The notes under the pieces are model-generated. The model did no database searches and had not been told where the DNA came from. It saw only the letters and a program-made list of their open reading frames with translations. Made by a program: the position numbers and the translations under genes. A DNA stretch of 64,000 nt from positions 248,001 through 312,000 of the IMG/VR virus record IMGVR_UViG_3300049793_000366; one strand, 5' to 3'. Positions within the stretch are counted from its first letter, which is position 1; the number at the start of each line of letters is the position of its first letter. Of the stretch, positions 7,670 to 43,110 are shown piece by piece.

Positions 7670-8032
7670 ATGGGTAAGGAAATTAAGAAGTTTAAGGAAT
7701 ACAGTAACCTGTCATCAGACGCGGAATCTGAGACTTTTGACATGGATGGAAATAAAATTTCGGGTCCACTTGAGATAGAGTCAATAATTGACGTATTTAC
7801 TGACCCTTCTGAAATCCCAGGAGTTAGCGAATCCGCATCTGGTATTAGTTTCAATACGGATCTCTCTGTTAAAGAGGTTAAAAGAGGTGATAATATTTGG
7901 ATAACTGCTCTTTTGAGAAAACCAGGTACAACATCGTTCAATTCCCCAGCCGTACAAGGTGTTATAAAAGTTAGAGTTGTTGATATATACTACGGATTGC
8001 AATACTTAAATAAAGTAATTAATAATGGCTAA
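7670..8032 (+). CDS. Late protein with N-terminal capsid-targeting-like sequence
   Basis: Starts MGKEIKKFKEY; late motif 4 nt upstream. Confidence 0.7.
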   Translation: MGKEIKKFKEYSNLSSDAESETFDMDGNKISGPLEIESIIDVFTDPSEIPGVSESASGISFNTDLSVKEVKRGDNIWITALLRKPGTTSFNSPAVQGVIKVRVVDIYYGLQYLNKVINNG

Positions 8033-8549
8033 GAAAATACACGGTAAACAATTATTAGATAATACTATCGTGAAAACGATAAATGGTGTGACTTATTCAC
8101 ACCAAGGTATTACGTCATCTAATGACAGTAATGTTACTCTTAGTATTGTATCTGGTCAGACACATTCATTTAATCTTGGTTGGACTGGTGTATTACCAGT
8201 TAGTAGGGGTGGTTTGAGTAATTCAACATTCACTGCTTCACAGATTTTGATTATTGATTCAATGACATCATCTGTTATTAGTTCTGGTTATCTTTTTAAT
8301 GATGCTGGAACATCTGCTTTTGATGTGTGGTCAGCAAATAAGATAATTTCTTATACATCAATGATAAGTGGTTCTGGTTTATCAGCATCGTTAGCAGTTG
8401 GTAATAATGCTGGAACATATTCGATTGATATGAACCAAAATAAGATAATGAATGTAGCAACTGGTTCAAATAGATTAGACGCGACTAACTACGGTCAAAT
8501 GTATGATATGAGTGTTGAGATGTTAAAAATAATAAGCCTAAGAGTATGA
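8025..8549 (+). CDS. Virion or tail-fibre-associated protein
   Basis: Ser/Thr/Gly-rich; LPVSRGG, WSANKI and NVATG..DATNYGQ fibre motifs. Confidence 0.65.
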   Translation: MAKKIHGKQLLDNTIVKTINGVTYSHQGITSSNDSNVTLSIVSGQTHSFNLGWTGVLPVSRGGLSNSTFTASQILIIDSMTSSVISSGYLFNDAGTSAFDVWSANKIISYTSMISGSGLSASLAVGNNAGTYSIDMNQNKIMNVATGSNRLDATNYGQMYDMSVEMLKIISLRV

Positions 8550-10627
8550 TAATTTTAAATGCGACAACTAAATTATTGGAAATATCAGTCGATTCTGCAC
8601 CATCAGTAAATATTGATTGGGTATCGAATTGGATTGATATGGGTCAAGCATCTTTCGTACCGATGGCTTATAGTGGTGCTTTAGGTCCTTTGCTAACCTC
8701 TGATGTAGTAGTTCCAGCGCCAATATCCAATCATCAACATCAATTAAAATATCTATCGATATACAATTCTGATAGCACGGCTTTAACTTTTAATGTTTTC
8801 TATAATGATAATGGTACACTTAGAACTATTACTAAGATAACATTAGATTCAGGTGATACCTTAAGATATATTGATAGTGATGGATTTAGTGTTTTATTAT
8901 CAAATGGTGCTATTAAAACTGGTGTTGTTGGTCCTGCTGGTGCTACGGGTGCTGGTGCTGATTTCACAATTAATAGTTTAACATATTCAGCTCAATATTT
9001 AACATCATCTAATGATACGAATGTTAAATTAAATATAGTATCTAGTGTTGATACACATTCGTTTAATGTAACTTGGAATGGACAACTTCCTGTAAATAGA
9101 GGTGGTTCTAATAATGCTACTTTCTCTAACTTGGAATTACTTAGAATGAATTTAGCTGGGACAGCTTTTGAAAGTTCAGGATTAACATCTGGTCAGATAT
9201 CGGTAGTTGGTCATACTCATAACGCAATCGATACAATAGGATTCACATCATCTACAAGGGGTGTGTTAAGTGCTACTTTGCCTATTTTATATAGCTCATC
9301 TACTGGTATAATATCAAGTCAACAATCTACTTCAACACAGTCTGGTTATTTATCGACTACTGATTGGAACACATTTAATAACAAACAGTCATCTTTAACA
9401 TTCACTAATGGAGTGACGAATAATAGTGGAACTGTATCATTAACAACGACTGGTGCTACTGCTGGTGCGTATTCATTCGTAAATGCTACAATAGATGCAT
9501 ATGGTAGAGTAACAAATATATCAAGTAACCCTGCTTCGTCTTCAACACAGTCTGGTTATTTAACAACAACTGATTGGAACACATTTAACAACAAGCAATC
9601 AGTATTGACATTTGTGAATGGTGTGACTAATAACAGTGGAACTGTTTCATTAACAACTACTGGTGTTACACCAGGTACATATACATTTTCAACATTTGTA
9701 GTTGATACTTATGGTAGAATCTCATCAGCTTCTAATGGTTTGCAATCATCTTCAACACAATCAGGTTATTTAACAACAACTGATTGGAACACATTTAACA
9801 ACAAGCAATCAGCATTAGTATTTGTAAACGGTTTAACAAACAATGGTGGTACTGTTTCATTAACAACTACCGGAGCAACTGCTGGTTCTTATACATTCTT
9901 GAGCGCGACTATTGATGCCTATGGTAGAGTAACTGATATATTCAGCAATCCTGCTTCGTCTTCAACACAATCAGGTTATTTGACATCAACTGATTGGAAC
10001 ACATTTAACAATAAACAATCAACACTTGCTTTTCCTGATGGTGTTCAGAATGTGGGTGGTACTGTTTCGCTTACAAATACTGGTGTTACTGCTGGTACAT
10101 ATACAAATACAACTCTTACAGTAGATGCTAATGGTAGAATAACTTCTGCTTCAAATGGTTTAACGCAATCAGCATCTAATGTGATGTTCACTAATAATGA
10201 ATGGTTATCTACGGTAGTTGGTTCTGGTACAACAGCAATTGTAAACTCACTTGCTACTGATGGTAGATTATATACGAGATATACTGCGGCAAGTGGTGGT
10301 GGGCAATCTTGTACATTTATTTTTCAATCTCGTATACCAAGAGACTTTGTTGGATTCCCTTCTAATAACGTATTTATCGATTCGTATAAATCTACTGGTA
10401 CACCAACTTTCACATTTGAATTTTTGAATCCAAGTGGTGTTGTATATCAAACAACAAGTATTTTACCAGGTTCTAATACAACATGGACTAATAATAATTT
10501 TAGTTTAACTGGTACGTGGTCATCTGGTGATATAATAACATTCAGAGTTACTATATCGAGTCCATCGAATACGGCTGAACACCGAATTGATAGATTTGAA
10601 TTACAGTATAATAGTAAGATAGGGTAA
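8546..10627 (+). CDS. Tail fibre protein with 70-aa repeats
   Basis: Four copies of TQSGYLxTTDWNTFNNKQ with TGxTAGxY..T.DAYGR motifs; short collagen-like GPAGATG. Confidence 0.8.
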   Translation: MIILNATTKLLEISVDSAPSVNIDWVSNWIDMGQASFVPMAYSGALGPLLTSDVVVPAPISNHQHQLKYLSIYNSDSTALTFNVFYNDNGTLRTITKITLDSGDTLRYIDSDGFSVLLSNGAIKTGVVGPAGATGAGADFTINSLTYSAQYLTSSNDTNVKLNIVSSVDTHSFNVTWNGQLPVNRGGSNNATFSNLELLRMNLAGTAFESSGLTSGQISVVGHTHNAIDTIGFTSSTRGVLSATLPILYSSSTGIISSQQSTSTQSGYLSTTDWNTFNNKQSSLTFTNGVTNNSGTVSLTTTGATAGAYSFVNATIDAYGRVTNISSNPASSSTQSGYLTTTDWNTFNNKQSVLTFVNGVTNNSGTVSLTTTGVTPGTYTFSTFVVDTYGRISSASNGLQSSSTQSGYLTTTDWNTFNNKQSALVFVNGLTNNGGTVSLTTTGATAGSYTFLSATIDAYGRVTDIFSNPASSSTQSGYLTSTDWNTFNNKQSTLAFPDGVQNVGGTVSLTNTGVTAGTYTNTTLTVDANGRITSASNGLTQSASNVMFTNNEWLSTVVGSGTTAIVNSLATDGRLYTRYTAASGGGQSCTFIFQSRIPRDFVGFPSNNVFIDSYKSTGTPTFTFEFLNPSGVVYQTTSILPGSNTTWTNNNFSLTGTWSSGDIITFRVTISSPSNTAEHRIDRFELQYNSKIG
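9331..10150 (+). repeat. Tandem 210-bp (70-aa) coding repeat, about 4 units
   Basis: TCxGGTTATTT...TGATTGGAACACATTTAA at 9341, 9551, 9761 and 9971. Confidence 0.9.
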
Positions 10628-10648
10628 AAAATAAAAAATATATAGGAC

Positions 10649-13600
10649 ATGGCATTTTTAGGTAAGTATAAGATATATCAACCAGTTGACTTTGGAACTA
10701 CAATTGATCCAAACTATGTAATACAAACATCACTTGATAGTCAAGTATTTGATGATATTACGAGTTTGGAAAATTTTGATAATGTTATTGGTAGAATCAG
10801 TGGTACGGTTGGATATTATTCTAATATACGTAATGAGATGTCTTTGCTTATTGATAACTTTGGTGGATTCTTAGACCTTAGTACTGCTGAACAAGAAATT
10901 GTTTCAAGACATTTCTTAGTTTCTAAAGCTGATAGAGATACAATACATACAAGTGATGAACAAATAGCAAACGCAAAAAGAATACAAGCATTATTAGCAA
11001 AGGAAAATGAGGATGCTGGTTATAACTATAATGCTGTTGTATATGCTGATAGTAATTTAATAGCTGATGTTACCGATTATCAATCAATTGACTATTTATA
11101 TACACCACATTTAACTGTTGGTAGTATTTCATTTGGTGCTAGCGGCCCAACTGGTGGTTCTGATTTATATGCTACAATTTCAACTAAGGTTGATACAACT
11201 GATAATAGACTACACTACCAGAATGTTCTTAAAGTTAAGAAAAATCCTGGTGTTGGTGAATATTCAAGTATTAATGCCGCTTTAGCTGCTATTACTGATA
11301 ATAGTACAACTAATAGATATAGTATTACTGTTTATCCAGGTAAATATACTGAGAGTACAATTTATACTAAGCCTTTCGTTGAGATATCGGGTATAGCTAA
11401 CTTCAACACAATAATTGAAGTTAATGATTATACTAAAGATGTTGTTGTGTTATGTCCTAATACATCATTTAATAATTTCTTATTAACGGGAGCAACAGCA
11501 ACAGGAGCAGCTGCTTTCGCGGTAACTGCTTCTTTTGGACCTGGTGCTTCTTGTGAAATTAATAACATATCATTCCTAACAGTTAATACTATTTTTAGGT
11601 CTGCTCTTAGTGTTGGTCAATTTGCAATAGTTGGATTTTTAAATTCTAATGTTTCAACGTTTTCTAATGTTAAGAAAGGTATTGATATAAGTGGTGCTGG
11701 TTATACAATATTATCGTGGGCTAACTCTAAGAACAGCGTTGTTTCAACTATTAGTGATTTTGCTGAATTGAGAGGTTCTAATAATCGATTAATATTTACT
11801 GATTTTGGTTTGATTACACAACCTGCTTTGGGTGGTACAATGTCCAATTTCGTAAGAATATATGATGGTGCTACTATTGACTTAGTTGGTGTTTCTATTG
11901 ATGGTGCTGGGACAGCACTTAATAACGAAAATACTGGTTCTGGTGTTAACATACGTGCGAATGGATTTAATATTATTAATTCATTAACGAGTGATGTTGT
12001 AATTGGTCATCCATCTACAGTTGGTAACTTACAGGGTATTGTTGATTCATCAAAAGTTACAATAGATTCTACTAATTTTAGATTATCATATTCAGAACCA
12101 ACTGGTGGTTTCGTAATTACAGGTGATTTCACACTTGGTCAATCACAAGGTACGTTGGTTGAAATGGGTGCTATCATCGAAAGAGCATTAACTATGGGTG
12201 TTTATGAAGGTGGTGATATAGCTACTGTTTCAGCAAGTGGTTTTACCGTTTCGGTTGAAGCTGGTTTTGGTTACCTATGTGATGATGGTGAAGCAGACCA
12301 TACTATTAGAAAGATTTTCTGGGATAATGATTCAATTGCGGTATCACCATATACTAGTGAGTTCTTATATTACAACTCAAGCGGTACTTTATTAAAGTCA
12401 GCAACTAGATTAGAGTCTCAACATTATATATTCTTAGGTAGAACTGTTACTGATAGTAGTTCTATTGTTTCAATCATACCATCTAAATTATATGGTATGC
12501 ATTATAGCAATGATGTTGATACATTATTGAGAGATGGTTTTGGTTCTATTTATAAGAGTGGTTCATTGGTAAGTGAAGGAACATCTGATAGAACATTAGA
12601 TGTTACAAGTGGTGTTTATTACAATACCCAATATAAATACACACCTTCTGGTGGACTTCCAATTACATTTGATGCGTTTTATAAAAATGGTAGTGGTGGA
12701 TTTACAATAAGTCGTAATCAACAAGTATTACCTAATAGTACATATGATAATGGTTCGGGTACTTTAGTAAGTGCTACTGCTGGATATTATATGAAGTTCG
12801 CACTATACGTAGTTGGTGATGGTGCCAATGAAAAATATTTCATAGTACACCCACAAGAACAACATCTTACCCAGTTAGCAGCGGAACAAGGTAGTATTCC
12901 AATTGCTCCTTCATATTTTGATGCAAGTATTACATTGATAGCGAGTATCGTTGTTCAACAAGGTAATAGTAGCATAGTTAGTATATTTGATAATAGACCA
13001 ACATTATCATTTAAGGCAGAAAGTGTAACAGCATTATCTACACATGGTAACTTAGCTGGTCTATTAGAAGATGACCATCCTCAATATTTATTAGGTAATG
13101 GTACAAGAGCAATGAGTGGTAACTTAAACTTAGGTAACAATAATATTACCAATGTTGCTAATATAAATGGTATTAGTATTGCTACACACTCAAGTAGACA
13201 TTTACCAAATGGTGCTGACCCTCTTACAACTGGTACACCATCTACGGTTGGTACATCAAATCAAGAAGGTATTGGTAATGCTTTCTCAAGACAAGACCAC
13301 GTACACGCACATGGTTTTCAGACAAATGAATTACATCATGCCTTATCAACAACAGTATCACATGGTTTCATGTCATCTGTTGATAAGTATAAACTGGACT
13401 ATATACCAGGCAGTAGTGCAAGCTATTTCTCAGAACCTTTATATGTTAATGGTTTAACGGTTTCTGTTTTTCAAGCTACATCAACTCAATCTGGATATCT
13501 ATCTACGACTGACTGGAATACATTTAATAATAAGCAATCAACATTAACATTTACGAATGGTTTAACAACATCGTCTGGTACTATATCGTTAACGACTACT

Positions 13601-16231
13601 GGTGTGTCATCTGGTAGCTATACATTCTCTAATGTGACTGTTGACCAATATGGTAGACTTACTTCTGTTTCTAATGGTAGTCAAGCTACATCAACTCAGT
13701 CTGGATATTTATCTACGACTGACTGGAATACATTTAATAATAAATTAGGTACATCACTTACTTCATCTTATATACTTGTTGGTAACGGTTCTAATGTTGC
13801 TGTTGGTGCTACTGTAAGTGGTGATGCTACATTATCAAACACTGGTGTATTGACATTAAATAGTTCTGTTGTGAATGATAGTAAAATAGCATCACATACA
13901 TCTACTAAGATTACAATTACTAATAAGAGTCAATTAAATACAAGTGTTGTATATTCTGACCAAGGAAATACATTTAGTGTTGCTAAACAATCTTTCCAAT
14001 CAGATGGTACTTATGCTCCAATTAAACTTGGTGGTTTAGCATCTGACCCATCTTCATTAGAGGCTGGTGACTTTTGGTATAACTCAGCAGATCCTTCACT
14101 TAAGTTTAGAACTGGTAGTAATACTACACGCATTGTTGTTGATACCAGATTATCACAAACATTGTATAATAAGACTCTTGAATCACCAATGATTGCTACT
14201 ATTAGTAATGGTGGTGGTAGTATATCTGTACCATCTATATCAGTAATTGATACAATGGTTCTTAGAAATACTGCGGAGACATTGACAAATAAAACGTTAA
14301 CTGGTCCAACTATATCTTATATTTATAATACCGGAACAGTAACATTACCGACATCGACTGATACATTAGTTGGTAGAAATACAACAGATACATTGACAAA
14401 CAAAACGTTAACTGGTCCGACTATATCTACTATTTATAATACCGGAACATTGACACTTCCTACCACAACAGATACGTTAGTTGGTAGAGCTACTAGTGAT
14501 GTATTAACAAATAAGACAATTAGTGCTTCTGGTAATACAATCAGTGATGCTTCAATAGCAACTGGTGATTTATTGAAATCAAACGGTTCTAAATTCGTTA
14601 GATTTGGAATGGGTTCACCTTTACAAGTATTACGTGTTAATGCTGGTGGTACTGATTTAGAATATGCTAATCCATCTGCTGGTTCCGGAACTGTTACGAG
14701 TGTTGGTATGACAACATCGGGTGTCTTATACAACGTTAATACAACAATAACAACAAGTGGTACTTTCTCACTGACCTTATTAACACAAAATGCTAATTTA
14801 ATATTTGCTGGTCCATCTACTGGTGGTGCTACTACTCCATCATTTAGGTCATTGGTTACGGCTGATATGCCATCAACTGTTGTATTAAATAATCAATCAA
14901 ATACAATAACAAACACTGCTAATACATCAGTATTATCATTGGTTAGTAGTAACGCTTCATTCACGGGTGACGCATTAACTGTAAATGTTAGTGGTAACTC
15001 TGTATCACCATATAACCTATTTAAATTAACATCTACTTTATCTGGAACAAGTACTGATAAGTTAGTTGTTAGTAAAGAGGGTATGTTGAGAGTTCATGTT
15101 GGTACTGCTTCAATGATAACGGCACCAACATATTCTATTGCTCACTTTGTATCAAACATTGGTGCGAGCGCGAGCGTAATTGTCACTGATACGTATGGTA
15201 CTATTGGTGCTGGATATATGGGTCGTAGAGCAAGAGGTACATCTGATGCTCCAACAGCAGTTCAAACAAATGACATATTGACATCATTTATTGGTAGAGG
15301 TTATGGTGCTACTAATATGAATACATCAGATGGTTATATTAGGATTGTGGCAAGTCAGAACTTTACCGACACAGCACATGGTACTTATATTTCCTTCTAC
15401 ACAACTGGTACATCCAGTATTGTTGCTTCTGAGAAAATGAGAATAGGAGATGATGGTACTATCACATTAACAACTGCTCTACCTATTACGTCTGGTGGTA
15501 CTGGTCAGATAACACCGAATGATGCATTAAATGCTTTATTCCTATCTGCTACTGCCTCTGGTACAGATACATACACAGTTACATTAACTGGTATTACATC
15601 CATAACAACTGGTACAATTATTAGAATTGGCTTTACAAATGCCAATACAAGTACTGCTACACTTAATGTTAACTCATTGGGTGCAATAGCCATTGTAAAA
15701 GAAGGTGGTATAGCATTGAGAGCATCTGACATTGGTCCTGGTTCAATACATCACTTGATGTACGATGGTGTAAGCTGGACTATTGTGGCATCAAGTATGA
15801 CTCTGAAGTCTATTGTATTCTTCTCACCATCACAGGTTACTTCTGGTACAGCATTCACGCTTACTTTAGTTTCTAATGATAGAGTTGTTAGAACTTTATC
15901 TGGGTCTAACGTAACCAACACATCATATACTGAGATTGCTTTACCAGCAGATTTCATATCGTTTCCAACAGGAGCTTATAGAGTTGATTCGAATAGGTCT
16001 GGTAACGGTACTCTTACGGTTACTATTGGTAAAGGTGGAGTAGCAGATGCTACGATGAATGCATTAAGCTTAGTTGCTACTGCTACCAACTCAACTTGGG
16101 AGACCAAAAGTGGTACACCAACTAGTTCATATACTGCTGGTGATAGATTGTTAATTACTATGACTACAACAACTTCTGGTAACACAACAACGGCTGTTGG
16201 TAACGTAATACTTCAATATTATGGTAGATAA
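10649..16231 (+). CDS. Large tail fibre / tail spike protein (1860 aa)
   Basis: YSSINAALAAI..I.VYPGKY.E beta-helix cap, DDHPQY, RQDHVH, TLTNKTL repeats, two 70-aa repeats; AATATATA at 10637-10644. Confidence 0.8.
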   Translation: MAFLGKYKIYQPVDFGTTIDPNYVIQTSLDSQVFDDITSLENFDNVIGRISGTVGYYSNIRNEMSLLIDNFGGFLDLSTAEQEIVSRHFLVSKADRDTIHTSDEQIANAKRIQALLAKENEDAGYNYNAVVYADSNLIADVTDYQSIDYLYTPHLTVGSISFGASGPTGGSDLYATISTKVDTTDNRLHYQNVLKVKKNPGVGEYSSINAALAAITDNSTTNRYSITVYPGKYTESTIYTKPFVEISGIANFNTIIEVNDYTKDVVVLCPNTSFNNFLLTGATATGAAAFAVTASFGPGASCEINNISFLTVNTIFRSALSVGQFAIVGFLNSNVSTFSNVKKGIDISGAGYTILSWANSKNSVVSTISDFAELRGSNNRLIFTDFGLITQPALGGTMSNFVRIYDGATIDLVGVSIDGAGTALNNENTGSGVNIRANGFNIINSLTSDVVIGHPSTVGNLQGIVDSSKVTIDSTNFRLSYSEPTGGFVITGDFTLGQSQGTLVEMGAIIERALTMGVYEGGDIATVSASGFTVSVEAGFGYLCDDGEADHTIRKIFWDNDSIAVSPYTSEFLYYNSSGTLLKSATRLESQHYIFLGRTVTDSSSIVSIIPSKLYGMHYSNDVDTLLRDGFGSIYKSGSLVSEGTSDRTLDVTSGVYYNTQYKYTPSGGLPITFDAFYKNGSGGFTISRNQQVLPNSTYDNGSGTLVSATAGYYMKFALYVVGDGANEKYFIVHPQEQHLTQLAAEQGSIPIAPSYFDASITLIASIVVQQGNSSIVSIFDNRPTLSFKAESVTALSTHGNLAGLLEDDHPQYLLGNGTRAMSGNLNLGNNNITNVANINGISIATHSSRHLPNGADPLTTGTPSTVGTSNQEGIGNAFSRQDHVHAHGFQTNELHHALSTTVSHGFMSSVDKYKLDYIPGSSASYFSEPLYVNGLTVSVFQATSTQSGYLSTTDWNTFNNKQSTLTFTNGLTTSSGTISLTTTGVSSGSYTFSNVTVDQYGRLTSVSNGSQATSTQSGYLSTTDWNTFNNKLGTSLTSSYILVGNGSNVAVGATVSGDATLSNTGVLTLNSSVVNDSKIASHTSTKITITNKSQLNTSVVYSDQGNTFSVAKQSFQSDGTYAPIKLGGLASDPSSLEAGDFWYNSADPSLKFRTGSNTTRIVVDTRLSQTLYNKTLESPMIATISNGGGSISVPSISVIDTMVLRNTAETLTNKTLTGPTISYIYNTGTVTLPTSTDTLVGRNTTDTLTNKTLTGPTISTIYNTGTLTLPTTTDTLVGRATSDVLTNKTISASGNTISDASIATGDLLKSNGSKFVRFGMGSPLQVLRVNAGGTDLEYANPSAGSGTVTSVGMTTSGVLYNVNTTITTSGTFSLTLLTQNANLIFAGPSTGGATTPSFRSLVTADMPSTVVLNNQSNTITNTANTSVLSLVSSNASFTGDALTVNVSGNSVSPYNLFKLTSTLSGTSTDKLVVSKEGMLRVHVGTASMITAPTYSIAHFVSNIGASASVIVTDTYGTIGAGYMGRRARGTSDAPTAVQTNDILTSFIGRGYGATNMNTSDGYIRIVASQNFTDTAHGTYISFYTTGTSSIVASEKMRIGDDGTITLTTALPITSGGTGQITPNDALNALFLSATASGTDTYTVTLTGITSITTGTIIRIGFTNANTSTATLNVNSLGAIAIVKEGGIALRASDIGPGSIHHLMYDGVSWTIVASSMTLKSIVFFSPSQVTSGTAFTLTLVSNDRVVRTLSGSNVTNTSYTEIALPADFISFPTGAYRVDSNRSGNGTLTVTIGKGGVADATMNALSLVATATNSTWETKSGTPTSSYTAGDRLLITMTTTTSGNTTTAVGNVILQYYGR
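13471..13745 (+). repeat. Two further copies of the 210-bp repeat unit
   Basis: TCAAGCTACATCAACTCA..CTGGATAT at 13471 and 13681. Confidence 0.85.
14270..14520 (+). repeat. 111-bp (37-aa) TLTNKTLTGPTI coding repeat
   Basis: ATTGACAAAyAAAACGTTAACTGGTCC at 14281 and 14392, plus a degenerate third copy. Confidence 0.8.
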
Positions 16232-17509: not shown

Positions 17510-17527
17510 AATTTTATATATAGTACT

Positions 17528-18292
17528 ATGGGAATTAAGTCTTATAACAACTATATTGTGGAGGAATTCGAAGAACAAGACTTCGAGCCTATTAAATCGT
17601 TCAAGATACACAATACATTGAATGATTCTGTATGGGATGGTGATAAAATTAAACCGGAAATAAAGAAGTCTCTTATCAATGTAGCACAAGATTATTTCGA
17701 TTATATCGAAGTTAAAGCTGATATAAAAGATATCTACTTTACTGGTTCTCTTGCTAATTACAATTACTCCGAATATTCTGATTTTGATATACATTTAGTG
17801 ATTGACTTTACTGATGTTAATGATGACGTTGAACTTGTTCAGAGATATTTAGACTTTGCTGAGAAGTTATGGAAAGAACAACACGATATTAAAATAGAGG
17901 GATATGAAGCTGAATTATACTGTCAGGATATTAATCACAAAATGATTGCTACTGGTATATACTCGTTGATGAGCGATGAGTGGATAAGAAAGCCATCTAA
18001 AATTGACTGGGAACCAGACGATGAATTAATTAAGAAGAAAGCTTCTAAGTTAATGAGTGCAATCGATGAGCTAATAGAAACATCGGAAGATGAGCATATT
18101 GATTATCACGAATTGAAAGATAAGATGAAGAAGACCTGGAAAAAGGTTAAAGGTATGAGACAAGCTGGGCTTGACTCTAAAGAGGGTGAATACTCTACTG
18201 AGAATTTAGTTTTTAAATTACTCAGAAGAAATGGTTATATTGGAAAATATATGGCACTCAAAAGAAAAATGTTCGATAAGAAATATGCTTAA
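17528..18292 (+). CDS. Pol-beta superfamily nucleotidyltransferase with N-terminal capsid-targeting-like sequence
   Basis: FTGSLANYNYSEYSDFDIH (GS..DxD); MGIKSYNNYIVEE; TTATATATA at 17514-17522. Confidence 0.8.
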   Translation: MGIKSYNNYIVEEFEEQDFEPIKSFKIHNTLNDSVWDGDKIKPEIKKSLINVAQDYFDYIEVKADIKDIYFTGSLANYNYSEYSDFDIHLVIDFTDVNDDVELVQRYLDFAEKLWKEQHDIKIEGYEAELYCQDINHKMIATGIYSLMSDEWIRKPSKIDWEPDDELIKKKASKLMSAIDELIETSEDEHIDYHELKDKMKKTWKKVKGMRQAGLDSKEGEYSTENLVFKLLRRNGYIGKYMALKRKMFDKKYA

Positions 18293-18950
18293 AATATCAG
18301 AGGTTGACCAATTATTTAAAAGTATATTCGAAGAAGCGAAGGTTCTATCGGTTGAATCTGTATTTGAGACCGAAGCTGAATTTGATAAACTTGTTATTTC
18401 AATACATGAGATAACAATGGATGACATTGGTATTATTCATACTAAGTTTATTTTTATGGTTAATAAAGAAAGAACTGAATTGGTTGAAGACTCGTTCATT
18501 TACTTATTTGATATAAACTGTGTATATCACAAGGTTAGCATTGGTGATTTAGAAGAACTAAGAACTAAGATTAAAGATATTTTTGAATCAGTATCATTTG
18601 GTGATGATATTACTGCACTGTCTGACTTCCTTGAAGCACCAGCTATGTTTTTAAACTACTATATGATGAAAGCTGATGTAACTGGGTATTCTGTGTTTAA
18701 TGTTAAATACACACCGAAGTTTAAATTGGCTCCTTGCTCAGAAACGACATTTGATTTCGAAATTTCAGTTAATAACTCATATAATATTCATTTGAGTATT
18801 AAGAAGGTGAGTACACAAGATTCTCCTTCTATGTATAAATTACAATTCAGATTCTTAGACCATTCGGAAAATATAGAACTTGATTCGTTGAAAAATATTC
18901 ACATGAAGATAGGTTCTGGTATTGCTGAAATACTTGATAAATATTTATAA
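18285..18950 (+). CDS. Hypothetical protein
   Basis: ORF; start adjusted to ATG 18285, which overlaps the upstream stop. Confidence 0.7.
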   Translation: MLKISEVDQLFKSIFEEAKVLSVESVFETEAEFDKLVISIHEITMDDIGIIHTKFIFMVNKERTELVEDSFIYLFDINCVYHKVSIGDLEELRTKIKDIFESVSFGDDITALSDFLEAPAMFLNYYMMKADVTGYSVFNVKYTPKFKLAPCSETTFDFEISVNNSYNIHLSIKKVSTQDSPSMYKLQFRFLDHSENIELDSLKNIHMKIGSGIAEILDKYL

Positions 18951-19339
18951 TGAAATACCTAGAGAAATATAACGACACTTATTTAGCTAATGCTCCAAAA
19001 GAGGATATAGTTAAAGATTGGTTTATGGCTGAATTTGAAGGTAATAAATACTGTGATGTAGAGAATATCACGGTTACCAGAGGTGCCTATAATATGAGAA
19101 AGGGTATAAGATTTTACCAATATAAAGTAATACTGTTACAAGACTTTAGTAAATCCTCAGATATTCTTGCGAATAAAAGTACTAAGAGTGTAGAAAATTT
19201 TAATGATATCACTCTTAATAAGATGGAAAGAAAGTATAGTATAATAATCAATGAACATATGGTTAAGTTTAAATCATATAGTGAAGTAGAAACTACAATT
19301 AGCTTCTACTTCAGTGATCCTATATCATTTCATAACTAA
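18950..19339 (+). CDS. Hypothetical protein with capsid-targeting-like N-terminus
   Basis: MKYLEKYND; TAATG coupling. Confidence 0.65.
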   Translation: MKYLEKYNDTYLANAPKEDIVKDWFMAEFEGNKYCDVENITVTRGAYNMRKGIRFYQYKVILLQDFSKSSDILANKSTKSVENFNDITLNKMERKYSIIINEHMVKFKSYSEVETTISFYFSDPISFHN

Positions 19340-21058: not shown

Positions 21059-21093
21059 TTCTATGCTTTTATTGTTGAATTGTTTAATATATA
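21059..21093. promoter_or_regulatory. Back-to-back middle (minus, AAAC-N16-CATAGAA) and late (plus, AATATATA) promoters
   Basis: Motifs at 21059-21085 and 21086-21093. Confidence 0.6.
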
Positions 21094-21097: not shown

Positions 21098-21883
21098 ATG
21101 CGTTTGAAAAAATTCGATACTTTTAATGAGAGCTGGTATTCAGTAGCCGCTAGAATGGTTAACTCTACACCAAGTAAAGATAGAATTATGGATTTCAGTA
21201 AGCCAAGTAATAACGACTTTAGAGTACCAAGTGCTAAAATTATATATCCAGACAACGCAATTATTGAATTTGTCATACAGGAAAATATATACTCAGACAT
21301 CGAAACTTACAAATTATTAGAGCCAAAAATGGCAATGAATGGTGATAGAAGATGTTATAGTACGGCGCTTATGTATTATACATTATTTGGTAGTGGTCTT
21401 CAATTTGATAACTTTGAAGAATATACATTGGTTAGGGGATATTTAAATAAAGCTGACGTAAATGAACACACATTTGATGGTTATATCGTGGGTGATAATG
21501 GATTTTATGAAACTGGTATAAGATTATCTACGAAAGAAGCGGGAAATTACGTATATTCACCTCTTGATGATGGTCTTATACAAATATTAACTAGTAATAA
21601 AGATACTTTTCACTATTTACGAAAGAATGTATCTGTTGGTAAGAAGTTACTTTATAAGGTAAAGGATCACATTTTAGATGATAATGAAATAGATTTAAGA
21701 ACAGAAATTGGTGGCGTACCAGCGGTTTTAATATTATATAGCAATATAGCATTTAACTGGGATTATAAACAAGCAGAAGCTTGTAAAGCCATTCTAAACT
21801 ATGCTGGATTAGCATCATTTAGAGGTATAAACATTGCTTCGATAAAAGGATTTAGTGATTTAGGAGAACTATTCTATGTATAA
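21098..21883 (+). CDS. Late protein with capsid-targeting-like N-terminus
   Basis: MRLKKFDTFNES. Confidence 0.7.
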   Translation: MRLKKFDTFNESWYSVAARMVNSTPSKDRIMDFSKPSNNDFRVPSAKIIYPDNAIIEFVIQENIYSDIETYKLLEPKMAMNGDRRCYSTALMYYTLFGSGLQFDNFEEYTLVRGYLNKADVNEHTFDGYIVGDNGFYETGIRLSTKEAGNYVYSPLDDGLIQILTSNKDTFHYLRKNVSVGKKLLYKVKDHILDDNEIDLRTEIGGVPAVLILYSNIAFNWDYKQAEACKAILNYAGLASFRGINIASIKGFSDLGELFYV

Positions 21884-22619: not shown

Positions 22620-22766
22620 ATGAAGTATATTAGGTTATATGAAGAATTTGTACTTAGTGGAGTAGAAACAGAAGAAGATGAATTACAGGATGTAAAAATC
22701 CTGAATAACGAAGTTACCCAGGATTCAAATGGTGTAATAAACATTAAAGGTTGGTCTAAGTATTAG
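22620..22766 (+). CDS. 48-aa acidic protein with capsid-targeting-like N-terminus (missing from the ORF track)
   Basis: MKYIRLYEEFVLSGVETEEDELQD...GWSKY*; ATG abuts the upstream stop. Confidence 0.6.
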   Translation: MKYIRLYEEFVLSGVETEEDELQDVKILNNEVTQDSNGVINIKGWSKY

Positions 22767-24016: not shown

Positions 24017-24541
24017 CTATTTCTTTTTCTTAGTCTTACCTAAGTTTTTAACCTTTTTGTCGTCTATCTTTTCGTCTTTATCTTTAGACTTTTTAGTATC
24101 GATGACTTTCTTCTCAGATAATACAGCACTTCCTACTAAGTCCATTACTCTATTTACTGCGTCTTCGATATCACCAGCAACTACTGGGATTTTCTTAGTA
24201 CCAGTATTCGCGCCTTTGACTAAGAATCCGTCAAATTCTGCTACATACTCAATTCTGGTACCATCTTGTTCAATTGTATTACCCATTGGTTCAACACCCA
24301 ATGCTTCTGCTAACTGTTTCATAGCTCTGTCACCAATATAACCAGTTTCTCCTTCATATTCATCTACAACATCAGTAGAAGCTTCTGGTGCTATTTCTGG
24401 TGAATTACCTTCGTGTGGTACTTCTTGTGTATCATCTGGCGTAGAAGCCTCTAAATTAGCATCCTCGTCATTTATAATTGAATCTTGGAATTCCTCGTTT
24501 TTCTTGATAAATTCGCCATATCCTTTAATAATTCTGTTCAT
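24017..24541 (-). CDS. Acidic late protein with capsid-targeting-like N-terminus and Lys-rich tail
   Basis: MNRIIKGYGEFIKKNEE. Confidence 0.7.
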   Translation of the reverse strand: MNRIIKGYGEFIKKNEEFQDSIINDEDANLEASTPDDTQEVPHEGNSPEIAPEASTDVVDEYEGETGYIGDRAMKQLAEALGVEPMGNTIEQDGTRIEYVAEFDGFLVKGANTGTKKIPVVAGDIEDAVNRVMDLVGSAVLSEKKVIDTKKSKDKDEKIDDKKVKNLGKTKKKK

Positions 24542-24565: not shown

Positions 24566-24587
24566 TATATATTATAAATTATATATA
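24566..24587. promoter_or_regulatory. Divergent late promoters
   Basis: AATATATA on minus at 24566-24573; TTATATATA on plus at 24579-24587. Confidence 0.55.
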
Positions 24588-24591: not shown

Positions 24592-25053
24592 ATGAAACAC
24601 TTGAAGTCATTTAAGATATTTAATGAGTCTTATTCAACAAGGGCTAACTTTAATCCACTTGAACCTGTTCATATGCCACACTCTGATAATGTTTATGGTT
24701 ATAGAATGCCTGGTGAGGGTGGTGATGATAGCGTTGTTGGTGATGAGTTTAGCAAACTAATGGTTTCTAAGTTAGTTTCTGAGGATGACATTCGTTGGTC
24801 TACTTATAATGCTGTTAAAATAGCACTTGATTATTGGGATGCGATAAGTGATGAAGAATGGATAGAAGTTGACGAAGAATTTAAGCAACGTGTAATAGAA
24901 AATCCTGAGAACCCAGCACCAGCTATAATTAAATTTCTGAAAAGATATGATAACTTAGATGAAGAGTTACTAAGACTCAAAGCTAAGATTGAAGGATTTA
25001 TCGAGAAGGATAAAGGATTCTTCGGTAGATTGAAAGACCGTTTTAAAAAGTAA
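24592..25053 (+). CDS. Late protein with capsid-targeting-like N-terminus
   Basis: MKHLKSFKIFNES. Confidence 0.7.
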   Translation: MKHLKSFKIFNESYSTRANFNPLEPVHMPHSDNVYGYRMPGEGGDDSVVGDEFSKLMVSKLVSEDDIRWSTYNAVKIALDYWDAISDEEWIEVDEEFKQRVIENPENPAPAIIKFLKRYDNLDEELLRLKAKIEGFIEKDKGFFGRLKDRFKK

Positions 25054-40053: not shown

Positions 40054-40118
40054 TTATATGTTAAAAACGAAGTTGGTTGATAACTTTGCTTAAACTTTTT
40101 CAGTGATATCAGATACAA
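40054..40118. promoter_or_regulatory. Divergent middle promoters
   Basis: CAAC-N15-CATATAA on minus (40054-40079); AAAC-N16-GATACAA on plus (40092-40118). Confidence 0.55.
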
Positions 40119-40123
40119 CTTCA

Positions 40124-40387: not shown

Positions 40388-40950
40388 GTAATGAAGAAAT
40401 ACAAGCAATTTTAAATAAGTGGTCTATTAAAATGACCATCGAAGATATTATTAAATGTTGGTCTGAATCACATAGACACTTTCATACAACCAAGCATTTA
40501 TATGATTTAATTGACAAAATAAATCAACGAAAAAACTCTATATCAGTAAACGATTATGAGAAGCTTATTATAGTTGCTTTATTCCACGACATAGTTTATG
40601 ACCCTAAATCACCAACAAATGAAGAAGACTCAGCCAGAGTGTTTATCAATTCTTTAACTAAAGAAGATGCTGGTACTAAAGAAATATATCAAGCTATTCT
40701 TGATACAAAGACACACGAAGCAAATACATTCATATCAAAAATATTCTGTTCACTTGATATGTCAGTAATCGAGGGTAATTTCAATGATTTACTTGAGTGG
40801 GAAAAAGGAATATGGGGTGAGTATCAAATATTTGGTAAAGAAGCCTATAAAATGGGTAGATTGAAATTTCTAAATACTTTACCAGCCGAATATCCGCAAA
40901 ATGCTGATAATTTAAATAAGCTCATTAAATGGGTTGAAGAGAATTATTAA
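40384..40950 (+). CDS. HD-superfamily metal-dependent phosphohydrolase
   Basis: RHFHT..H, ALFHDIVYDP, NEEDSA. Confidence 0.85.
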   Translation: MSNEEIQAILNKWSIKMTIEDIIKCWSESHRHFHTTKHLYDLIDKINQRKNSISVNDYEKLIIVALFHDIVYDPKSPTNEEDSARVFINSLTKEDAGTKEIYQAILDTKTHEANTFISKIFCSLDMSVIEGNFNDLLEWEKGIWGEYQIFGKEAYKMGRLKFLNTLPAEYPQNADNLNKLIKWVEENY

Positions 40951-41552
40951 TTCTGATTCGCTTGGTCTAATTCCTTAGATAATGGTGTGTTAAGAAAGCT
41001 ACCTAAACCTAAATCAGTTAATACATCTTTAAGTGTGATATCAATTACACCGTTTATCAATTCTTCGAACGGTAAATCTTCATACACTTCAATTACTGCC
41101 TTAGTTTCATCATATTCATTTGGATTAGAACCTTTGATTATGACTAAATTTTCTTCGGTCATTTCTAAGTCGTATCTTCTGTATAATATCGTAGATAAGA
41201 AAGAGCCTTTTGCTTCTTTCTCAATCGAAAGAACAACAAGCCAAATACCATCAGAGAAATAGTATTTAAATATACCATTTTCATCTTTACCAGCACCACA
41301 AGCTTTTGGGTTATTAGATATCAAGCATTGTTCTAAGAATGTATGGAAGTGTGCTAATTTATCGTGAAATATAACAAATTGAGAATCGGTATCGATGCCA
41401 GTTGGAGTTGATGCTAATTGTTTGAAGTCTATCAATCCCTGTAAGATTGGAATTTCCATTCTGGATTTTATATCATCAGTGTCAAACAATTCGTTAAACT
41501 TCTTTAATCTACTATTCAATCCAAAGGATTGTCTACTATTTAATCTTGACAT
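40947..41552 (-). CDS. Late hypothetical protein (RLKKFNELF near N-terminus)
   Basis: Late motif at 41573-41580. Confidence 0.65.
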   Translation of the reverse strand: MSRLNSRQSFGLNSRLKKFNELFDTDDIKSRMEIPILQGLIDFKQLASTPTGIDTDSQFVIFHDKLAHFHTFLEQCLISNNPKACGAGKDENGIFKYYFSDGIWLVVLSIEKEAKGSFLSTILYRRYDLEMTEENLVIIKGSNPNEYDETKAVIEVYEDLPFEELINGVIDITLKDVLTDLGLGSFLNTPLSKELDQANQN

Positions 41553-41578
41553 CGAATATACCTATTTTTAAGTATATA

Positions 41579-42316
41579 TTAATAGTTCATTATAAGAATT
41601 TCGTCACGAGTACCCTTTCTGGTATGCCATTCCCATCTATAAGAATCAGTAGGATATAGTTCTTCTAACATTCTGTTATAATAATAGCTTAAACAGAATT
41701 TACCATCAATATTTGATAGAATGTTGCTCAATTCGCGATGTCTCTGTCTATCGAAGTTATGAAAGTGATAATAATTTTCAGTATTGAAATATGGTGGGTC
41801 AACATAGAACAATGTATTCTCCGAATCATATTTATTGATACAATCAATGAAGTCTAATCCTTCTATATCAGAAATGTTTGCTATTTTATCACTAAATCTT
41901 TTCTGATTGATGTGTATCTTATATGCTTGCCAACCGCCAGCTCTGAATGAGCCGCTTAATATAGTTTGTTGTGATAAGCTATTAGCTAAAACATATGCCC
42001 ACCTCATAGCCATTTCGAAATTAGGTGCAGTGAAGATATCTGTTATTTCAGATTGATATTGATAATATAATTTCTCGGATGTTGGTATTTCACTTATGAA
42101 GTCAGCAAATGCTGGGTCTTTCATACACAGAAATAAATTGTAGTTTAGTGGATTGATATCATTATAGACTGCTTTGATATCATTTCTGAATAATGAAAAA
42201 TAAGTGGAGTACATTCCACCAAAAGGTTCAATGAATGTATTCCACGATTCATCAGGGGGTAAGTTTCTAAGTATAAATGGACTTAGTTTAACTTTATTTC
42301 CAATATATGGTAGCAT
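41579..42316 (-). CDS. Dam-like DNA adenine methyltransferase (D12 family)
   Basis: PYIGNK, EPFGG, YND, YVDPPY. Confidence 0.9.
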   Translation of the reverse strand: MLPYIGNKVKLSPFILRNLPPDESWNTFIEPFGGMYSTYFSLFRNDIKAVYNDINPLNYNLFLCMKDPAFADFISEIPTSEKLYYQYQSEITDIFTAPNFEMAMRWAYVLANSLSQQTILSGSFRAGGWQAYKIHINQKRFSDKIANISDIEGLDFIDCINKYDSENTLFYVDPPYFNTENYYHFHNFDRQRHRELSNILSNIDGKFCLSYYYNRMLEELYPTDSYRWEWHTRKGTRDEILIMNY

Positions 42317-43110
42317 TAAATATTAAGTATTAAGTCCGTTTTAACGTATTCGTATTCTTCAAATATCTCACCAAAGTAAGTGATGCACTCTTGTACAAAG
42401 TCTTCGTATTCTACTTCACCTTCAAATATGTTTTCATGTTGAAGCTCGTGAAACACACCTTTTAAATCAATTTTAAATTGTAAAGTTGCCTCATCCTTTT
42501 GTACAAATTGTGATAGTTGCGATATTGCATCATCATCTAAATCTTCTAACATCGGTATATGTTTCCAATAGAACATATCATCAATTCCCTGAAATACTAA
42601 TTTTTTGTATTCTTCAACGCTTGGGAAAACCACTGAGTTTGCTAATTTACCATATTTAGTTTTATGATAACCATACGCATATCTCATAGTTGCTTCTGCT
42701 ACTAAATCATCAGGATTATGACCACCGCCACCACCAAATTCAAATTTGTATTTCTTCTGACCAGTCAGTGACTCACAATACATAAGATATAAATCTACTA
42801 ACCCATTCATTTGACTAATAGGGTGAAGGTCTTCTTCAAACTCTTCATCTATGTCAACATATCTTGTTACATCTTCTTCTGATTCGAATAGTTGAACTAC
42901 GGTTGACTTATCCCAACCCTTAGCTAACATACGTTGTTTGAATAAATTCAAATCTGAGTTTGGATCTCTATTTGTCTTAGCAAGTTCATTACCATATAAT
43001 GATATTTGTGACCCAAACTTCGCACAAACGCTGTATAAATCAATTACAAACTTTTCCAACGTTGGATTAGAGCTTGATTCTTTGTATAGATTGTATTTCT
43101 TTATAATCAT
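42316..43110 (-). CDS. Late acidic protein with capsid-targeting-like N-terminus
   Basis: MIIKKYNLYKES; AATATATA at 43115-43122. Confidence 0.7.
   Translation of the reverse strand: MIIKKYNLYKESSSNPTLEKFVIDLYSVCAKFGSQISLYGNELAKTNRDPNSDLNLFKQRMLAKGWDKSTVVQLFESEEDVTRYVDIDEEFEEDLHPISQMNGLVDLYLMYCESLTGQKKYKFEFGGGGGHNPDDLVAEATMRYAYGYHKTKYGKLANSVVFPSVEEYKKLVFQGIDDMFYWKHIPMLEDLDDDAISQLSQFVQKDEATLQFKIDLKGVFHELQHENIFEGEVEYEDFVQECITYFGEIFEEYEYVKTDLILNI

What the first reader, a model, noticed from the sequence alone, without database searches (positions are those of the whole stretch)
7670..43110. A second address label: T4-like N-terminal capsid-targeting sequence on about 9 late proteins
SEEN: MGKEIKKFKEY (7670), MGIKSYNNYIVEE (17528), MKYLEKYND (18950), MRLKKFDTFNES (21098), MKYIRLYEEF (22620), MNRIIKGYGEFIKKNEE (24541), MKHLKSFKIFNES (24592), ..RLKKFNELF (41552) and MIIKKYNLYKES (43110). 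The consensus is [IL]K.[FY]..[FY]..E. All are directly behind, or in an operon with, the ATATATA motif, and none carries the R-tag. KNOWN: T4 internal proteins use an MKT[YF]xEF-type leader for head packaging, removed by gp21 after Glu. INFERENCE: a set of packaged and injected proteins, so the phage sorts its accessory proteome with two exclusive peptide labels.
Basis: partly seen in the sequence, partly recalled or inferred. Interest (0 to 1): 0.65.

Follow-up and report, generated by a model that had tools for sequence, protein, structure and literature searches.

The report
T4-like capsid-targeting leader, massively expanded
About one protein in ten of this 508-kb soil megaphage starts with the same short peptide, a longer cousin of phage T4's capsid-targeting leader, so it most likely marks proteins to be loaded into the phage head, trimmed there, and possibly delivered into the host with the DNA.

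Summary
The nine N-termini are in the sequence. Six pass a strict profile test, two are marginal or not at the first ATG, and one fails. The motif is far bigger than reported. Genome-wide, 72 of about 706 proteins start with M-K-[HY]-[IL]-K-x-[FY]-[EN]-x-[FY], against 0.9 expected. It is selected at the amino-acid level and sits on unrelated proteins. The tagged genes mostly follow a TAATATATA late-promoter-like motif.

The same leader heads small ORFs in at least 120 uncultured viral contigs. There it is a sharp 13-mer ending in [IVL]-N-E. It is near chance level in 596 Gb of cellular genomes. The complete tag-bearing genomes, including this one, encode a T4-type portal, gp21-like protease-scaffold and gp23 capsid module.

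The conserved positions (two aromatics three apart, then I-x-E) are the T4 CTS residues shown genetically to drive targeting (4, 7) and processing (8, 10). The same heptad recurs 11 times in this phage's protease-scaffold protein, 10 of them in a tandem array.

The T4-like reading is well supported by comparison but not experimentally shown. Packaging, cleavage and injection are inferred. The "second exclusive label" claim could not be tested. I rate it a new variant of a known kind.

The parts
7670..8032 (+). Tagged ORF (120 aa, MGKEIKKFKEY...). TAATATATA lies at 7657-7665, 4 nt before the ATG. It heads an operon with the tail-fibre-like gene at 8546-10627.
   Evidence: (14.6 bits). No Pfam or PHROG family.
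17528..18292 (+). Tagged ORF (254 aa, MGIKSYNNYIVEE...). The body is a nucleotidyltransferase-like domain starting near residue 24. TATATA lies at 17515-17520, 7 nt before the ATG.
   Evidence: phrog_36119, 3e-37; weak NTP_transf_2; 15.2 bits.
18950..19339 (+). It is not a member by my profile, because E replaces the invariant K. It has no promoter motif of its own and lies in the operon behind 17528.
   Evidence: (-4.7 bits).
21098..21883 (+). Tagged ORF (261 aa, MRLKKFDTFNES...), with an F-N-E|S cleavage-like end. TAATATATA lies at 21085-21093, 4 nt before the ATG. An untagged M28 peptidase (21876-22619) follows in the same operon.
   Evidence: (16.4 bits).
22620..22766 (+). Tagged mini-ORF (48 aa, MKYIRLYEEF...), the last gene of the 21098 operon.
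   Evidence: (16.6 bits).
24017..24541 (-). Marginal member (174 aa, MNRIIKGYGEFIKKNEE...). TAATATATA lies at 24574-24566, 24 nt before the ATG, divergent from the gene at 24592.
   Evidence: 9.5 bits, below the 10.2 threshold; 3.5 bits with the final profile.
24592..25053 (+). Best window member (153 aa, MKHLKSFKIFNES...), with the canonical M-K-H-L-K-x-F start and an F-N-E|S end. AATTATATA lies at 24577-24585, 6 nt before the ATG.
   Evidence: (20.8 bits).
40947..41552 (-). ORF (201 aa) with the motif (RLKKFNELF) at residues 16-24 of the first-ATG reading. An in-frame TTG at codon 12 would give MNSRLKKFNELF. A paralogue elsewhere in the genome (gene starting at G000 231999) begins MRLKKFNELFDT. 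TAATATATA lies at 41581-41573.
   Evidence: (13.7 bits at residue 16).
42316..43110 (-). Tagged ORF (264 aa, MIIKKYNLYKES...). TAATATATA lies at 43123-43115, 4 nt before the ATG. A Dam-type methyltransferase (41579-42316) is downstream.
   Evidence: (16.0 bits).

Best explanation
The motif is a capsid-targeting, protease-removable N-terminal leader of the T4 CTS type, in a longer form. In this genome it reads M-K-[HY]-[IL]-K-x-[FY]-[EN]-x-[FY]. The fuller family form is M-K-H-I-K-L-F-E-x-F-[IVL]-N-E.

Proposed mechanism (every step is inferred, none is shown):
1. Tagged genes are transcribed late from TAATATATA promoters, often as nearly leaderless mRNAs.
2. The two aromatic residues, three apart, dock the leader onto the scaffolding core. 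That core is built by the 757-aa gp21-like protease-scaffold protein, whose own C-terminal half carries tandem copies of the same [FY]-x-x-[FY]-[IL]-x-E heptad.
3. The cargo is enclosed by the gp23-type shell.
4. The prohead protease cuts after the Glu of [ILV/F]-x-E, freeing the mature cargo inside the head.
5. Cargo may then enter the host with the DNA.

The cargo set is about 72 unrelated, mostly small and acidic proteins. It includes a CCA-adding tRNA nucleotidyltransferase, a NUDIX hydrolase, a P-loop kinase, a nucleotidyltransferase, an ankyrin-repeat protein and a STAND-like ATPase. I read these as ready-made host-takeover or counter-defence tools, but that is speculation.
For: Non-randomness and level of selection
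- 72 tagged N-termini against 0.9 expected.
- Codons at the conserved positions follow genome codon usage: AAA/AAG 22/18, a mix of TTT/TTC/TAT/TAC, and I/L spread over 7 codons. Selection therefore acts on the peptide.
- The protein bodies are unrelated by BLASTP, apart from one pair. They carry unrelated Pfam domains that begin about 25-90 residues in.

Distribution
- It finds only 38 hits in 596 Gb of prokaryote genomes. About 10 of these look like tags, and all of those lie on MAG contigs.
- In 133 non-redundant viral examples, the positions the search did not constrain are [IVL] 62%, N 43% and E 66% at residues 11-13. Conservation stops after residue 13.

Link to a T4-type head
- All 5 of the 5 tag-bearing viral genomes that are at least 90% complete, and 24 of 50 contigs overall, encode a Gp23-family capsid protein.
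- This genome has Portal_T4 (200 bits), a head maturation protease (phrog_207, 6e-30; PF03420 at 18.7 bits) and Gp23 (96 bits), in T4 gene order. Relatives share the module.

Link to T4 genetics
- The T4 CTS is MKTYQEFIAE. Residues 4 and 7 drive targeting and residues 8 and 10 drive processing, and gp21 cuts after L/I-x-E (PMC9026906). These are the aromatic, aromatic, I and E positions conserved in the tag.
- The T4 CTS scores in the top 0.03% of decamers on this genome's profile.

The protease-scaffold protein
- [FY]..[FY][ILV].E occurs 46 times in the proteome, and 11 of those are in the protease-scaffold protein. Ten of them form a 14-aa (42-nt) tandem array.
- Every tag-bearing relative examined has 2-14 such heptads in that protein. 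PTm1, PAU, pT24 and MA9V-2 have 0-1.

Capsid protein propeptides
- The capsid proteins of these phages share [IL]-[NY]-E-[NSD]-A near residues 42-46. In this genome it reads SINE|NA.
- In cultured PAU, N-terminal sequencing shows that about 65 residues are removed from the capsid protein (PMC5646251).

Cultured relatives
- PAU has 14 genes starting MKT[LI]xxL[YF]E. Eleven lie between 100 and 121 kb around the head genes (portal at 108 kb, capsid protein at 115 kb). They include the depositor-annotated scaffolding protein and an internal capsid protein.
- MA9V-2 has 4 genes starting MK[TN]F..F[IV]NE, one of them between portal and protease.
- The 735-kb phage LR756501 uses the short T4-like form MK.[FY]..[FY]INE.

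Expression
- The TATATA motif precedes the portal-protease-capsid operon, the tail-fibre-like operon, both giant ORFs and the terminase operon. It does not precede the polymerase, primase or PurZ-like genes. This fits a late promoter.
Against: - There are no proteomic, N-terminal-sequencing or transcript data for this phage or any close relative. Only one DNA run holds the window.
- In this genome only 30 of 72 tags (42%, against 19% background) have a hydrophobic-x-E site within seven residues after the second aromatic. Many tags may therefore not be cleaved where the model says.
- Seventy-two distinct cargo species, 10% of the proteome, is far beyond any documented CTS set.
- The tagged bodies are acidic (median pI 5.0), whereas the T4 internal proteins are basic.
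- The PAU labels 'scaffolding' and 'internal capsid protein' are the depositors' annotations with no stated basis. PHROGs gave no support for them.
- The co-occurrence of tag and gp23-type head could simply reflect shared ancestry within one phage clade.
- The complex prediction gave no answer.
Confidence: 0.65

Rival explanations
1. The leader is only a substrate or recognition signal for the phage protease (activation or turnover by cleavage), or a docking helix for some other shared phage partner such as a chaperone or another phage-built compartment. In this reading the proteins do not end up inside the capsid.
For: - The strongest in-genome link is to the protease-scaffold protein's own repeats, which are likely cleavage sites.
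- The cargo number (72) and the acidic pI are atypical for head-internal proteins.
- Nothing shown here places any tagged protein in a virion.
Against: - In T4 the gp21 protease acts inside the prohead, and the same leader residues that match here drive targeting.
- In the cultured relatives PAU and MA9V-2 the leaders sit on genes inside or next to the head-assembly cluster.
- Late-promoter association fits virion components.
Confidence: 0.15
2. The conserved start is an mRNA- or translation-level feature. It would be an AT-rich, unstructured 5' coding region needed to initiate translation on nearly leaderless late transcripts in a host without Shine-Dalgarno pairing.
For: - TATATA ends only 4-7 nt before the ATG in 33 of the 47 tagged genes that have the motif.
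- No SD-like motif is found upstream of genes.
- All conserved residues have AT-rich codons.
Against: - Synonymous codons vary freely at the conserved positions, and I/L and F/Y interchange.
- About 59 untagged genes use the same 0-9 nt promoter spacing without the tag.
- Among 136 tagged starts in other phages, only 29% have TATATA within 40 nt and 12% have it at leaderless distance, yet the peptide is conserved.
- Conservation is position-specific and stops sharply at residue 13.
Confidence: 0.05
3. The proteins are one diverged paralogous family, and the shared N-terminus is its last recognisable remnant. Alternatively, the match is a compositional accident of an AT-rich genome.
For: A few tagged genes have detectable paralogues (589/591, 596/593, 364/586). 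Tagged genes also cluster in hyperplastic stretches such as 456-461 kb.
Against: - Bodies range from 48 to 619 aa and carry unrelated known folds: ankyrin, PolyA_pol head domain, NUDIX, AAA_33.
- Shuffled N-termini give 0.9 hits against 72 observed.
- The reversed-pattern controls give 0 hits in this genome and 0-1 in the other records, against up to 34 real hits.
Confidence: 0.03

Closest known systems
[quoted passage not shown]
   Same: - An N-terminal leader of about 10 residues on otherwise unrelated proteins.
- The pattern K-x-[FY]-x-x-[FY]-[ILV]-x-E, with the aromatic pair and the I/E pair at the positions T4 genetics assigns to targeting and processing.
- The genome encodes gp20-, gp21- and gp23-type head genes.
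- Tagged genes lie in variable, hyperplastic regions.
   Different: - The common form here is three residues longer (M-K-H-I-K... against M-K-T-...).
- There are about 72 carriers (10% of genes) instead of a handful.
- The carriers are acidic, not basic, and include recognisable enzymes.
- The terminal cleavage site is degenerate in more than half of this genome's copies.
- No experimental evidence of packaging exists.
Propeptide-bearing head and inner-body or ejection proteins of phiKZ-like giant phages (phiKZ, 201phi2-1, SPN3US)
   Same: Dozens of head proteins are processed by a gp21-related prohead protease C-terminal to Glu after a short motif (PMC9026906). The capsids are very large and carry much internal protein.
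   Different: Those phages use S/A/G-x-E sites and have no single shared N-terminal leader sequence. Here one stereotyped 10-13-mer is reused, and the head genes are closer to T4's.
Leaders found here in the cultured relatives Sphingomonas phage PAU (MKT[LI]xxL[YF]E, 14 genes) and Chryseobacterium phage MA9V-2 (MK[TN]F..F[IV]NE, 4 genes)
   Same: They share the same clade of gp23-type jumbo phages of Bacteroidota-like hosts. The leader is at the very N-terminus of small unrelated ORFs, and many of those lie inside or beside the head-assembly cluster.
   Different: Copy number is low. The consensus differs in PAU. Their protease or scaffold proteins lack the YSEY[IL]AE repeat array. As far as my searches show, these leaders have not been described in the literature.
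Encapsulin cargo-loading peptides
   Same: A short terminal peptide directs unrelated cargo proteins into an HK97-fold shell. This is a functional analogy only.
   Different: Encapsulin peptides are C-terminal, are not cleaved, and bind the shell protein directly. There is no sequence relationship.

Membership tests
T4-type capsid targeting sequence (CTS) | A short conserved leader at the extreme N-terminus of otherwise unrelated proteins | tested here: met
   72 proteins carry it, and the invariant K falls at residue 5 in about half of the members first examined (23 of 46). Bodies are unrelated by BLASTP and Pfam.
T4-type capsid targeting sequence (CTS) | Sequence determinants of the T4 CTS: aromatic residues at positions 4 and 7 (targeting), and I/L at 8 and E at 10 (processing) | tested here: met
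   The aromatic pair three apart is near-invariant in this genome. The wider family adds [IVL] 62% and E 66% in register. The T4 CTS scores in the top 0.03% of decamers on the profile. The T4 determinants come from PMC9026906. The I/E half is weaker in this genome.
T4-type capsid targeting sequence (CTS) | The genome encodes a T4-type prohead: gp20 portal, gp21-family protease with a scaffolding core, and gp23 capsid protein | tested here: met
   PF07230 at 200 bits; phrog_207 at 6e-30, with PF03420 below its cut-off at 18.7 bits; PF07068 at 96 bits. The genes are in T4 order at G000 91592-97426.
T4-type capsid targeting sequence (CTS) | The leader ends in a prohead-protease site (hydrophobic-x-E) and is removed | tested here: inconclusive
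   A site is present in 93 of 133 viral examples, but in only 30 of 72 in this genome, against 19% background. Removal itself cannot be tested here.
T4-type capsid targeting sequence (CTS) | Carriers are found inside mature capsids, and the leader suffices to load a foreign protein | not testable with these tools
   No virion proteome exists for this uncultured phage. The complex prediction returned no answer.
T4-type capsid targeting sequence (CTS) | Expression together with the head genes (late) | tested here: inconclusive
   The TAATATATA-like motif lies upstream of 64% of tagged genes against 17% of untagged ones. It also precedes the structural operons but not the replication genes. No RNA data exist.
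phiKZ-type head propeptides | Cleavage at S/A/G-x-E by a gp175-type protease, with no common leader | tested here: not met
   Position P3 is hydrophobic (I, V, L or F), not S, A or G. A single stereotyped leader is present.

The most novel reading that the evidence does not exclude
A clade of uncultured 250-700-kb phages with T4-type heads loads dozens of different proteins into its capsid, about 10% of the proteome in this genome. It does so through one 13-residue leader that imitates a repeat unit of the phage's own protease-scaffold protein. The leader co-assembles with the scaffold and is clipped off by the same cuts that dismantle it. The cargo (tRNA CCA-adding enzyme, NUDIX hydrolase, P-loop kinase, nucleotidyltransferase, ankyrin and STAND-like proteins, and many orphans) would be a pre-made counter-defence and takeover kit injected with the DNA. 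The leader would then let virion cargo be read directly from metagenomic sequence.
Probability: 0.35. Interest if true: 0.8.

Novelty: new variant of a known kind. Interest (0 to 1): 0.68.

Why it matters
If the leader is a loading signal, the injected or packaged proteome of uncultured megaphages could be predicted from sequence alone, without culturing them. That would point to dozens of candidate early-acting effectors per genome. It would also show that the T4 CTS mechanism, known from a few proteins in one model phage, is ancient and widespread, and has been scaled up more than ten-fold in the largest phages. The scaffold-repeat resemblance suggests a concrete, testable idea for how a CTS is recognised, which is still unclear in T4. 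A 13-residue tag that loads arbitrary proteins into a very large capsid could also be useful for protein-delivery engineering.

Tried and rejected
- Complex prediction of the 757-aa protease-scaffold protein with the first 40 residues of the 24592 protein returned 'no answer' (score 0.02, controls not run). It counts neither for nor against binding.
- The genome-wide family search for PF03420 found nothing. A direct scan of the 757-aa protein did find it weakly (18.7 bits), and found PHROG 207 strongly. The first negative was therefore a sensitivity limit of the quick scan.
- A tblastn of a 403-aa tagged protein from a related contig against cultured phages gave no match.
- The long-form pattern is absent (0-1 hits) from cultured PTm1, PAU, MA9V-2, pT24, MaF61 and Lak-A1. 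These phages turned out to carry other leader forms or none.
- PHROG scans of the PAU leader-bearing proteins gave no functional names.
- Full-text searches for the leader strings found no paper, and the jumbo-phage comparative review does not mention such a leader.
- No RNA run holds the window, so promoter timing and transcript starts could not be checked.
C-terminal labels were not examined.
- I considered and rejected a host secretion or sorting signal, because the leader is at near-chance frequency in 596 Gb of cellular genomes.

Full report
**Context**

The window is bases 248001-312000 of a single 507,910-bp viral contig.
- GC content is 33%.
- IMG/VR classes the record as a 'provirus', and CheckV estimates 97% completeness.
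- Genes have A-rich upstream regions and no Shine-Dalgarno signal.
- The only public run that holds the window is a soil metagenome.
- The capsid protein is 53-65% identical to those of uncultured 635-735-kb phages (LR745206, LR756502, LR756504, LR756501), about 30% to the Prevotella Lak phages, and 25-27% to the cultured jumbo phages PTm1, PAU, MA9V-1/2, pT24 and MaF61.
- My own crude gene call gives 706 genes covering 90.7% of the contig. All proteome counts below rest on that call.

**The observation**

All nine quoted N-termini are present. I aligned every N-terminus containing K.[FY]..[FY] and built a profile from them. The consensus is M-K-[HY]-[IL]-K-x-[FY]-[EN]-x-[FY]. The invariant K sits at residue 5 in about half of the members first examined (23 of 46).

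Statistics for the profile, with the threshold set for 0.5 false N-terminal hits:
- 72 proteins qualify.
- 0.88 proteins (maximum 4) qualify after shuffling residues 2-20.
- 12 hits occur in 124,778 internal positions.
- Five more members appear behind a second Met, which points to mis-called starts.

Within the window:
- 24541 is marginal.
- 41552 has a good motif 15 residues in from the first ATG, with a TTG start just before it.
- 18950 fails.

**Peptide, not nucleotide**

- Codons at the conserved positions mirror genome usage. K is AAA/AAG 22/18, the aromatics use all four TTY/TAY codons, and I/L is spread over seven codons.
- Many untagged genes use the same promoter spacing.
- In other phages the peptide is conserved whatever lies upstream. 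Only 29% of 136 tagged starts have TATATA within 40 nt.
- Beyond the leader the proteins are unrelated. Only one tagged-tagged pair is detectable by BLASTP.
- Where a domain is recognisable, it starts about 25-90 residues in. Examples are the PolyA_pol head domain (CCA-adding enzyme), NUDIX, AAA_33, ankyrin repeats, a STAND-like ATPase and a nucleotidyltransferase.

**Promoter link**

- A TAATATATA-like motif lies within 60 nt upstream of 64% of tagged genes and 17% of other genes (odds ratio 8.8, p = 1e-16).
- In 33 of the 47 tagged genes that have the motif, it ends only 4-7 nt before the ATG. This implies nearly leaderless transcripts if the motif works like T4's -10-type late promoter. That step is inference.
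- The motif also precedes the portal-protease-capsid operon, the tail-fibre-like operon, the 1860-aa and 2131-aa ORFs and the terminase operon.
- It does not precede the polymerase, primase or PurZ-like genes.
- This is consistent with a late promoter, but no RNA data exist.

**Distribution**

A back-translated pattern for MKH[ILF]KxFExF gave the following:
All are at the starts of small unrelated ORFs.
- Only 38 stretches in 596 Gb of prokaryote genomes. Most of those are internal or out of frame. The roughly ten tag-like ones sit on MAG contigs, mostly binned as Bacteroidota.

In 133 non-redundant viral examples, the residues my pattern did not fix are [IVL] 62%, N 43% and E 66% at positions 11-13. 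Nothing is conserved after position 13. The full leader is therefore a sharply bounded 13-mer, M-K-H-I-K-L-F-E-x-F-[IVL]-N-E.

A more general pattern gave these counts:

| Genome | Hits | Reversed-pattern control |
|---|---|---|
| This genome | 25 | 0 |
| LR745206 | 26 | 0 |
| LR756504 | 34 | 0 |
| LR756500 | 14 | 1 |
| LR756501 | 1 | 0 |
| Lak-A1 | 1 | 1 |
| Five cultured relatives (PTm1, PAU, MA9V-2, pT24, MaF61) | 0-1 each | 0 |

**Link to a T4-type head**

- Of 50 tag-bearing viral contigs, 24 encode a Gp23-family capsid protein. That includes all five that are at least 90% complete. The remainder are 6-60% fragments of phages whose inferred size is roughly 250-700 kb.
- This genome has, in T4 order, a Portal_T4 protein (200 bits), a 757-aa head maturation protease (phrog_207, 6e-30; PF03420 at 18.7 bits) and a Gp23 capsid protein (96 bits).
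- Relatives share this module.

**Link to T4 genetics**

- The T4 CTS is MKTYQEFIAE.
- According to the review PMC9026906, residues 4 and 7 carry targeting and residues 8 and 10 carry processing. The gp21 protease cuts after L/I-x-E.
- Aligned from the cleavage end, these four residues (Y, F, I, E) fall on the conserved F7, F10, I11 and E13 of the 13-mer.
- The T4 decamer ranks in the top 0.03% of decamers on this genome's profile, despite a penalty for its Met.
- Short, T4-length forms also exist. LR756501 has MK.[FY]..[FY]INE, MA9V-2 has four MK[TN]F..F[IV]NE ORFs, and this genome has a few, such as MKKNYSEFINE.

**The protease-scaffold protein**

- The heptad [FY]..[FY][ILV].E occurs 46 times in about 153,000 residues of proteome.
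- Eleven of those 46 lie in the 757-aa protease-scaffold protein. Ten of them form a 14-aa repeat, Y-S-E-Y-[IL]-A-E-N-L-D-K-N-I-A.
- The repeat corresponds to a 42-nt tandem array of 10.7 copies.
- Every tag-bearing relative examined has 2-14 such heptads in the homologous protein. PTm1, PAU, pT24 and MA9V-2 have 0-1.
- I infer that this heptad is the extended recognition and cleavage unit of the prohead protease, and that the leader is a single copy of it with an N-terminal extension.

**Capsid-protein propeptide**

- The capsid proteins of these phages share [IL]-[NY]-E-[NSD]-A about 42-46 residues in. In this genome it reads S-I-N-E-N-A.
- In cultured PAU, N-terminal sequencing showed a 585-residue precursor maturing to 520 residues (PMC5646251 Table 1). 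That places the cut beside A-L-M-E-N-Y, to within one residue by my count.

**Cultured anchors**

- PAU has 14 genes starting MKT[LI]xxL[YF]E. Eleven lie between 100 and 121 kb around the head genes (portal at 108 kb, capsid protein at 115 kb). They include the genes its depositors call scaffolding (gp152) and internal capsid protein (gp154). The basis of those names is not stated, and PHROGs did not confirm them.
- MA9V-2's MKTFTYFINE ORF lies between the portal and protease genes.

**Weaknesses**

- Nothing here shows packaging, cleavage or injection.
- In this genome only 42% of tags (19% background) have a hydrophobic-x-E site just after the second aromatic. Among those that do, P2 is N in 14 of 30 and P1' is S in 12 of 30.
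- The tagged bodies are acidic (median pI 5.0, against 5.6 for the rest), unlike the basic T4 internal proteins.
- Seventy-two cargo species is unprecedented.
- The association between tag and head type may partly reflect common descent.
- The complex prediction was uninformative.

**Verdict**

- The best explanation is a T4-type capsid-targeting and processing leader in a longer variant, expanded to about a tenth of the proteome and shared by many uncultured jumbo phages and megaphages. My confidence is about 0.65.
- The string and keyword searches I ran found no description of it in the literature.
- The 'two exclusive labels' part of the interpretation remains untested.

Noticed in passing
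G000:C1:93393-95666 (outside the window; L124:13393-15666). The tandem array is at G000 94259-94707.: The 757-aa gp21-like protease carries a C-terminal scaffold-like, Glu-rich half. That half contains a 42-nt tandem array of 10.7 copies encoding Y-S-E-Y-[IL]-A-E-N-L-D-K-N-I-A. The array is conserved in copy-variable form (2-14 heptads) in all tag-bearing relatives examined and is absent from cultured relatives.
   Followed up: partly
Window-wide, for example 7657-7665, 21085-21093, 24577-24585 and 43115-43123. Genome-wide.: The TAATATATA-like motif ends only 4-7 nt before the ATG of many genes, both tagged and untagged, including the 1860-aa ORF at 10649. If it is a -10-type late promoter, these transcripts would be leaderless or nearly so.
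   Followed up: partly
window 35885-37159 (+): A 424-aa protein matches PHROG 1211 over its full length (5.9e-116). That family is annotated as '2-aminooxy adenylosuccinate synthetase' (PurZ/PurA-like). This raises the possibility of 2-aminoadenine (Z-base) DNA or another purine-pathway takeover.
   Followed up: no
window 26856-28301 (-) and 28342-29292 (-): The DNA polymerase and large-terminase matches each cover only part of their PHROG profiles (polymerase positions 490-839 of 856, terminase positions 251-456 of 807). The two genes lie next to each other. This suggests genes split by introns, inteins or homing elements, or separate subunits.
   Followed up: no
window 21876-22619 (+) and G000:C1:97610-98959: There are two M28-family metallopeptidases. 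One sits between two tagged genes in the window. The other lies immediately after the capsid gene and before a tagged gene. They could trim N-termini after leader removal, but that is speculation.
   Followed up: no
window 10649-16231 (+) and 51131-57526 (-): Two giant ORFs (1860 and 2131 aa) lie behind TATATA motifs and have no PHROG match. The first follows a tail-fibre-like gene (8546-10627).
   Followed up: no
G000:C1:456252-460692 and 399948-403108: These are dense runs of tagged small genes: 8 of 11 consecutive genes in the first stretch and 5 of 6 in the second. They are reminiscent of the hyperplastic internal-protein locus of T-even phages.
   Followed up: partly
JQ362498.1 (phage PAU) 90-121 kb; OR513085.1 (MA9V-2) 162.9-166.7 and 216-218 kb: Cultured jumbo phages carry their own stereotyped N-terminal leaders on 14 (PAU) and 4 (MA9V-2) small ORFs. 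Eleven of PAU's 14 and two of MA9V-2's four lie in or near the head-assembly genes. These are the easiest places to test the hypothesis experimentally.
   Followed up: partly
whole record: IMG/VR labels this 508-kb record a 'provirus', although CheckV estimates 97% completeness. I did not look for host flanks or an integrase.
   Followed up: no
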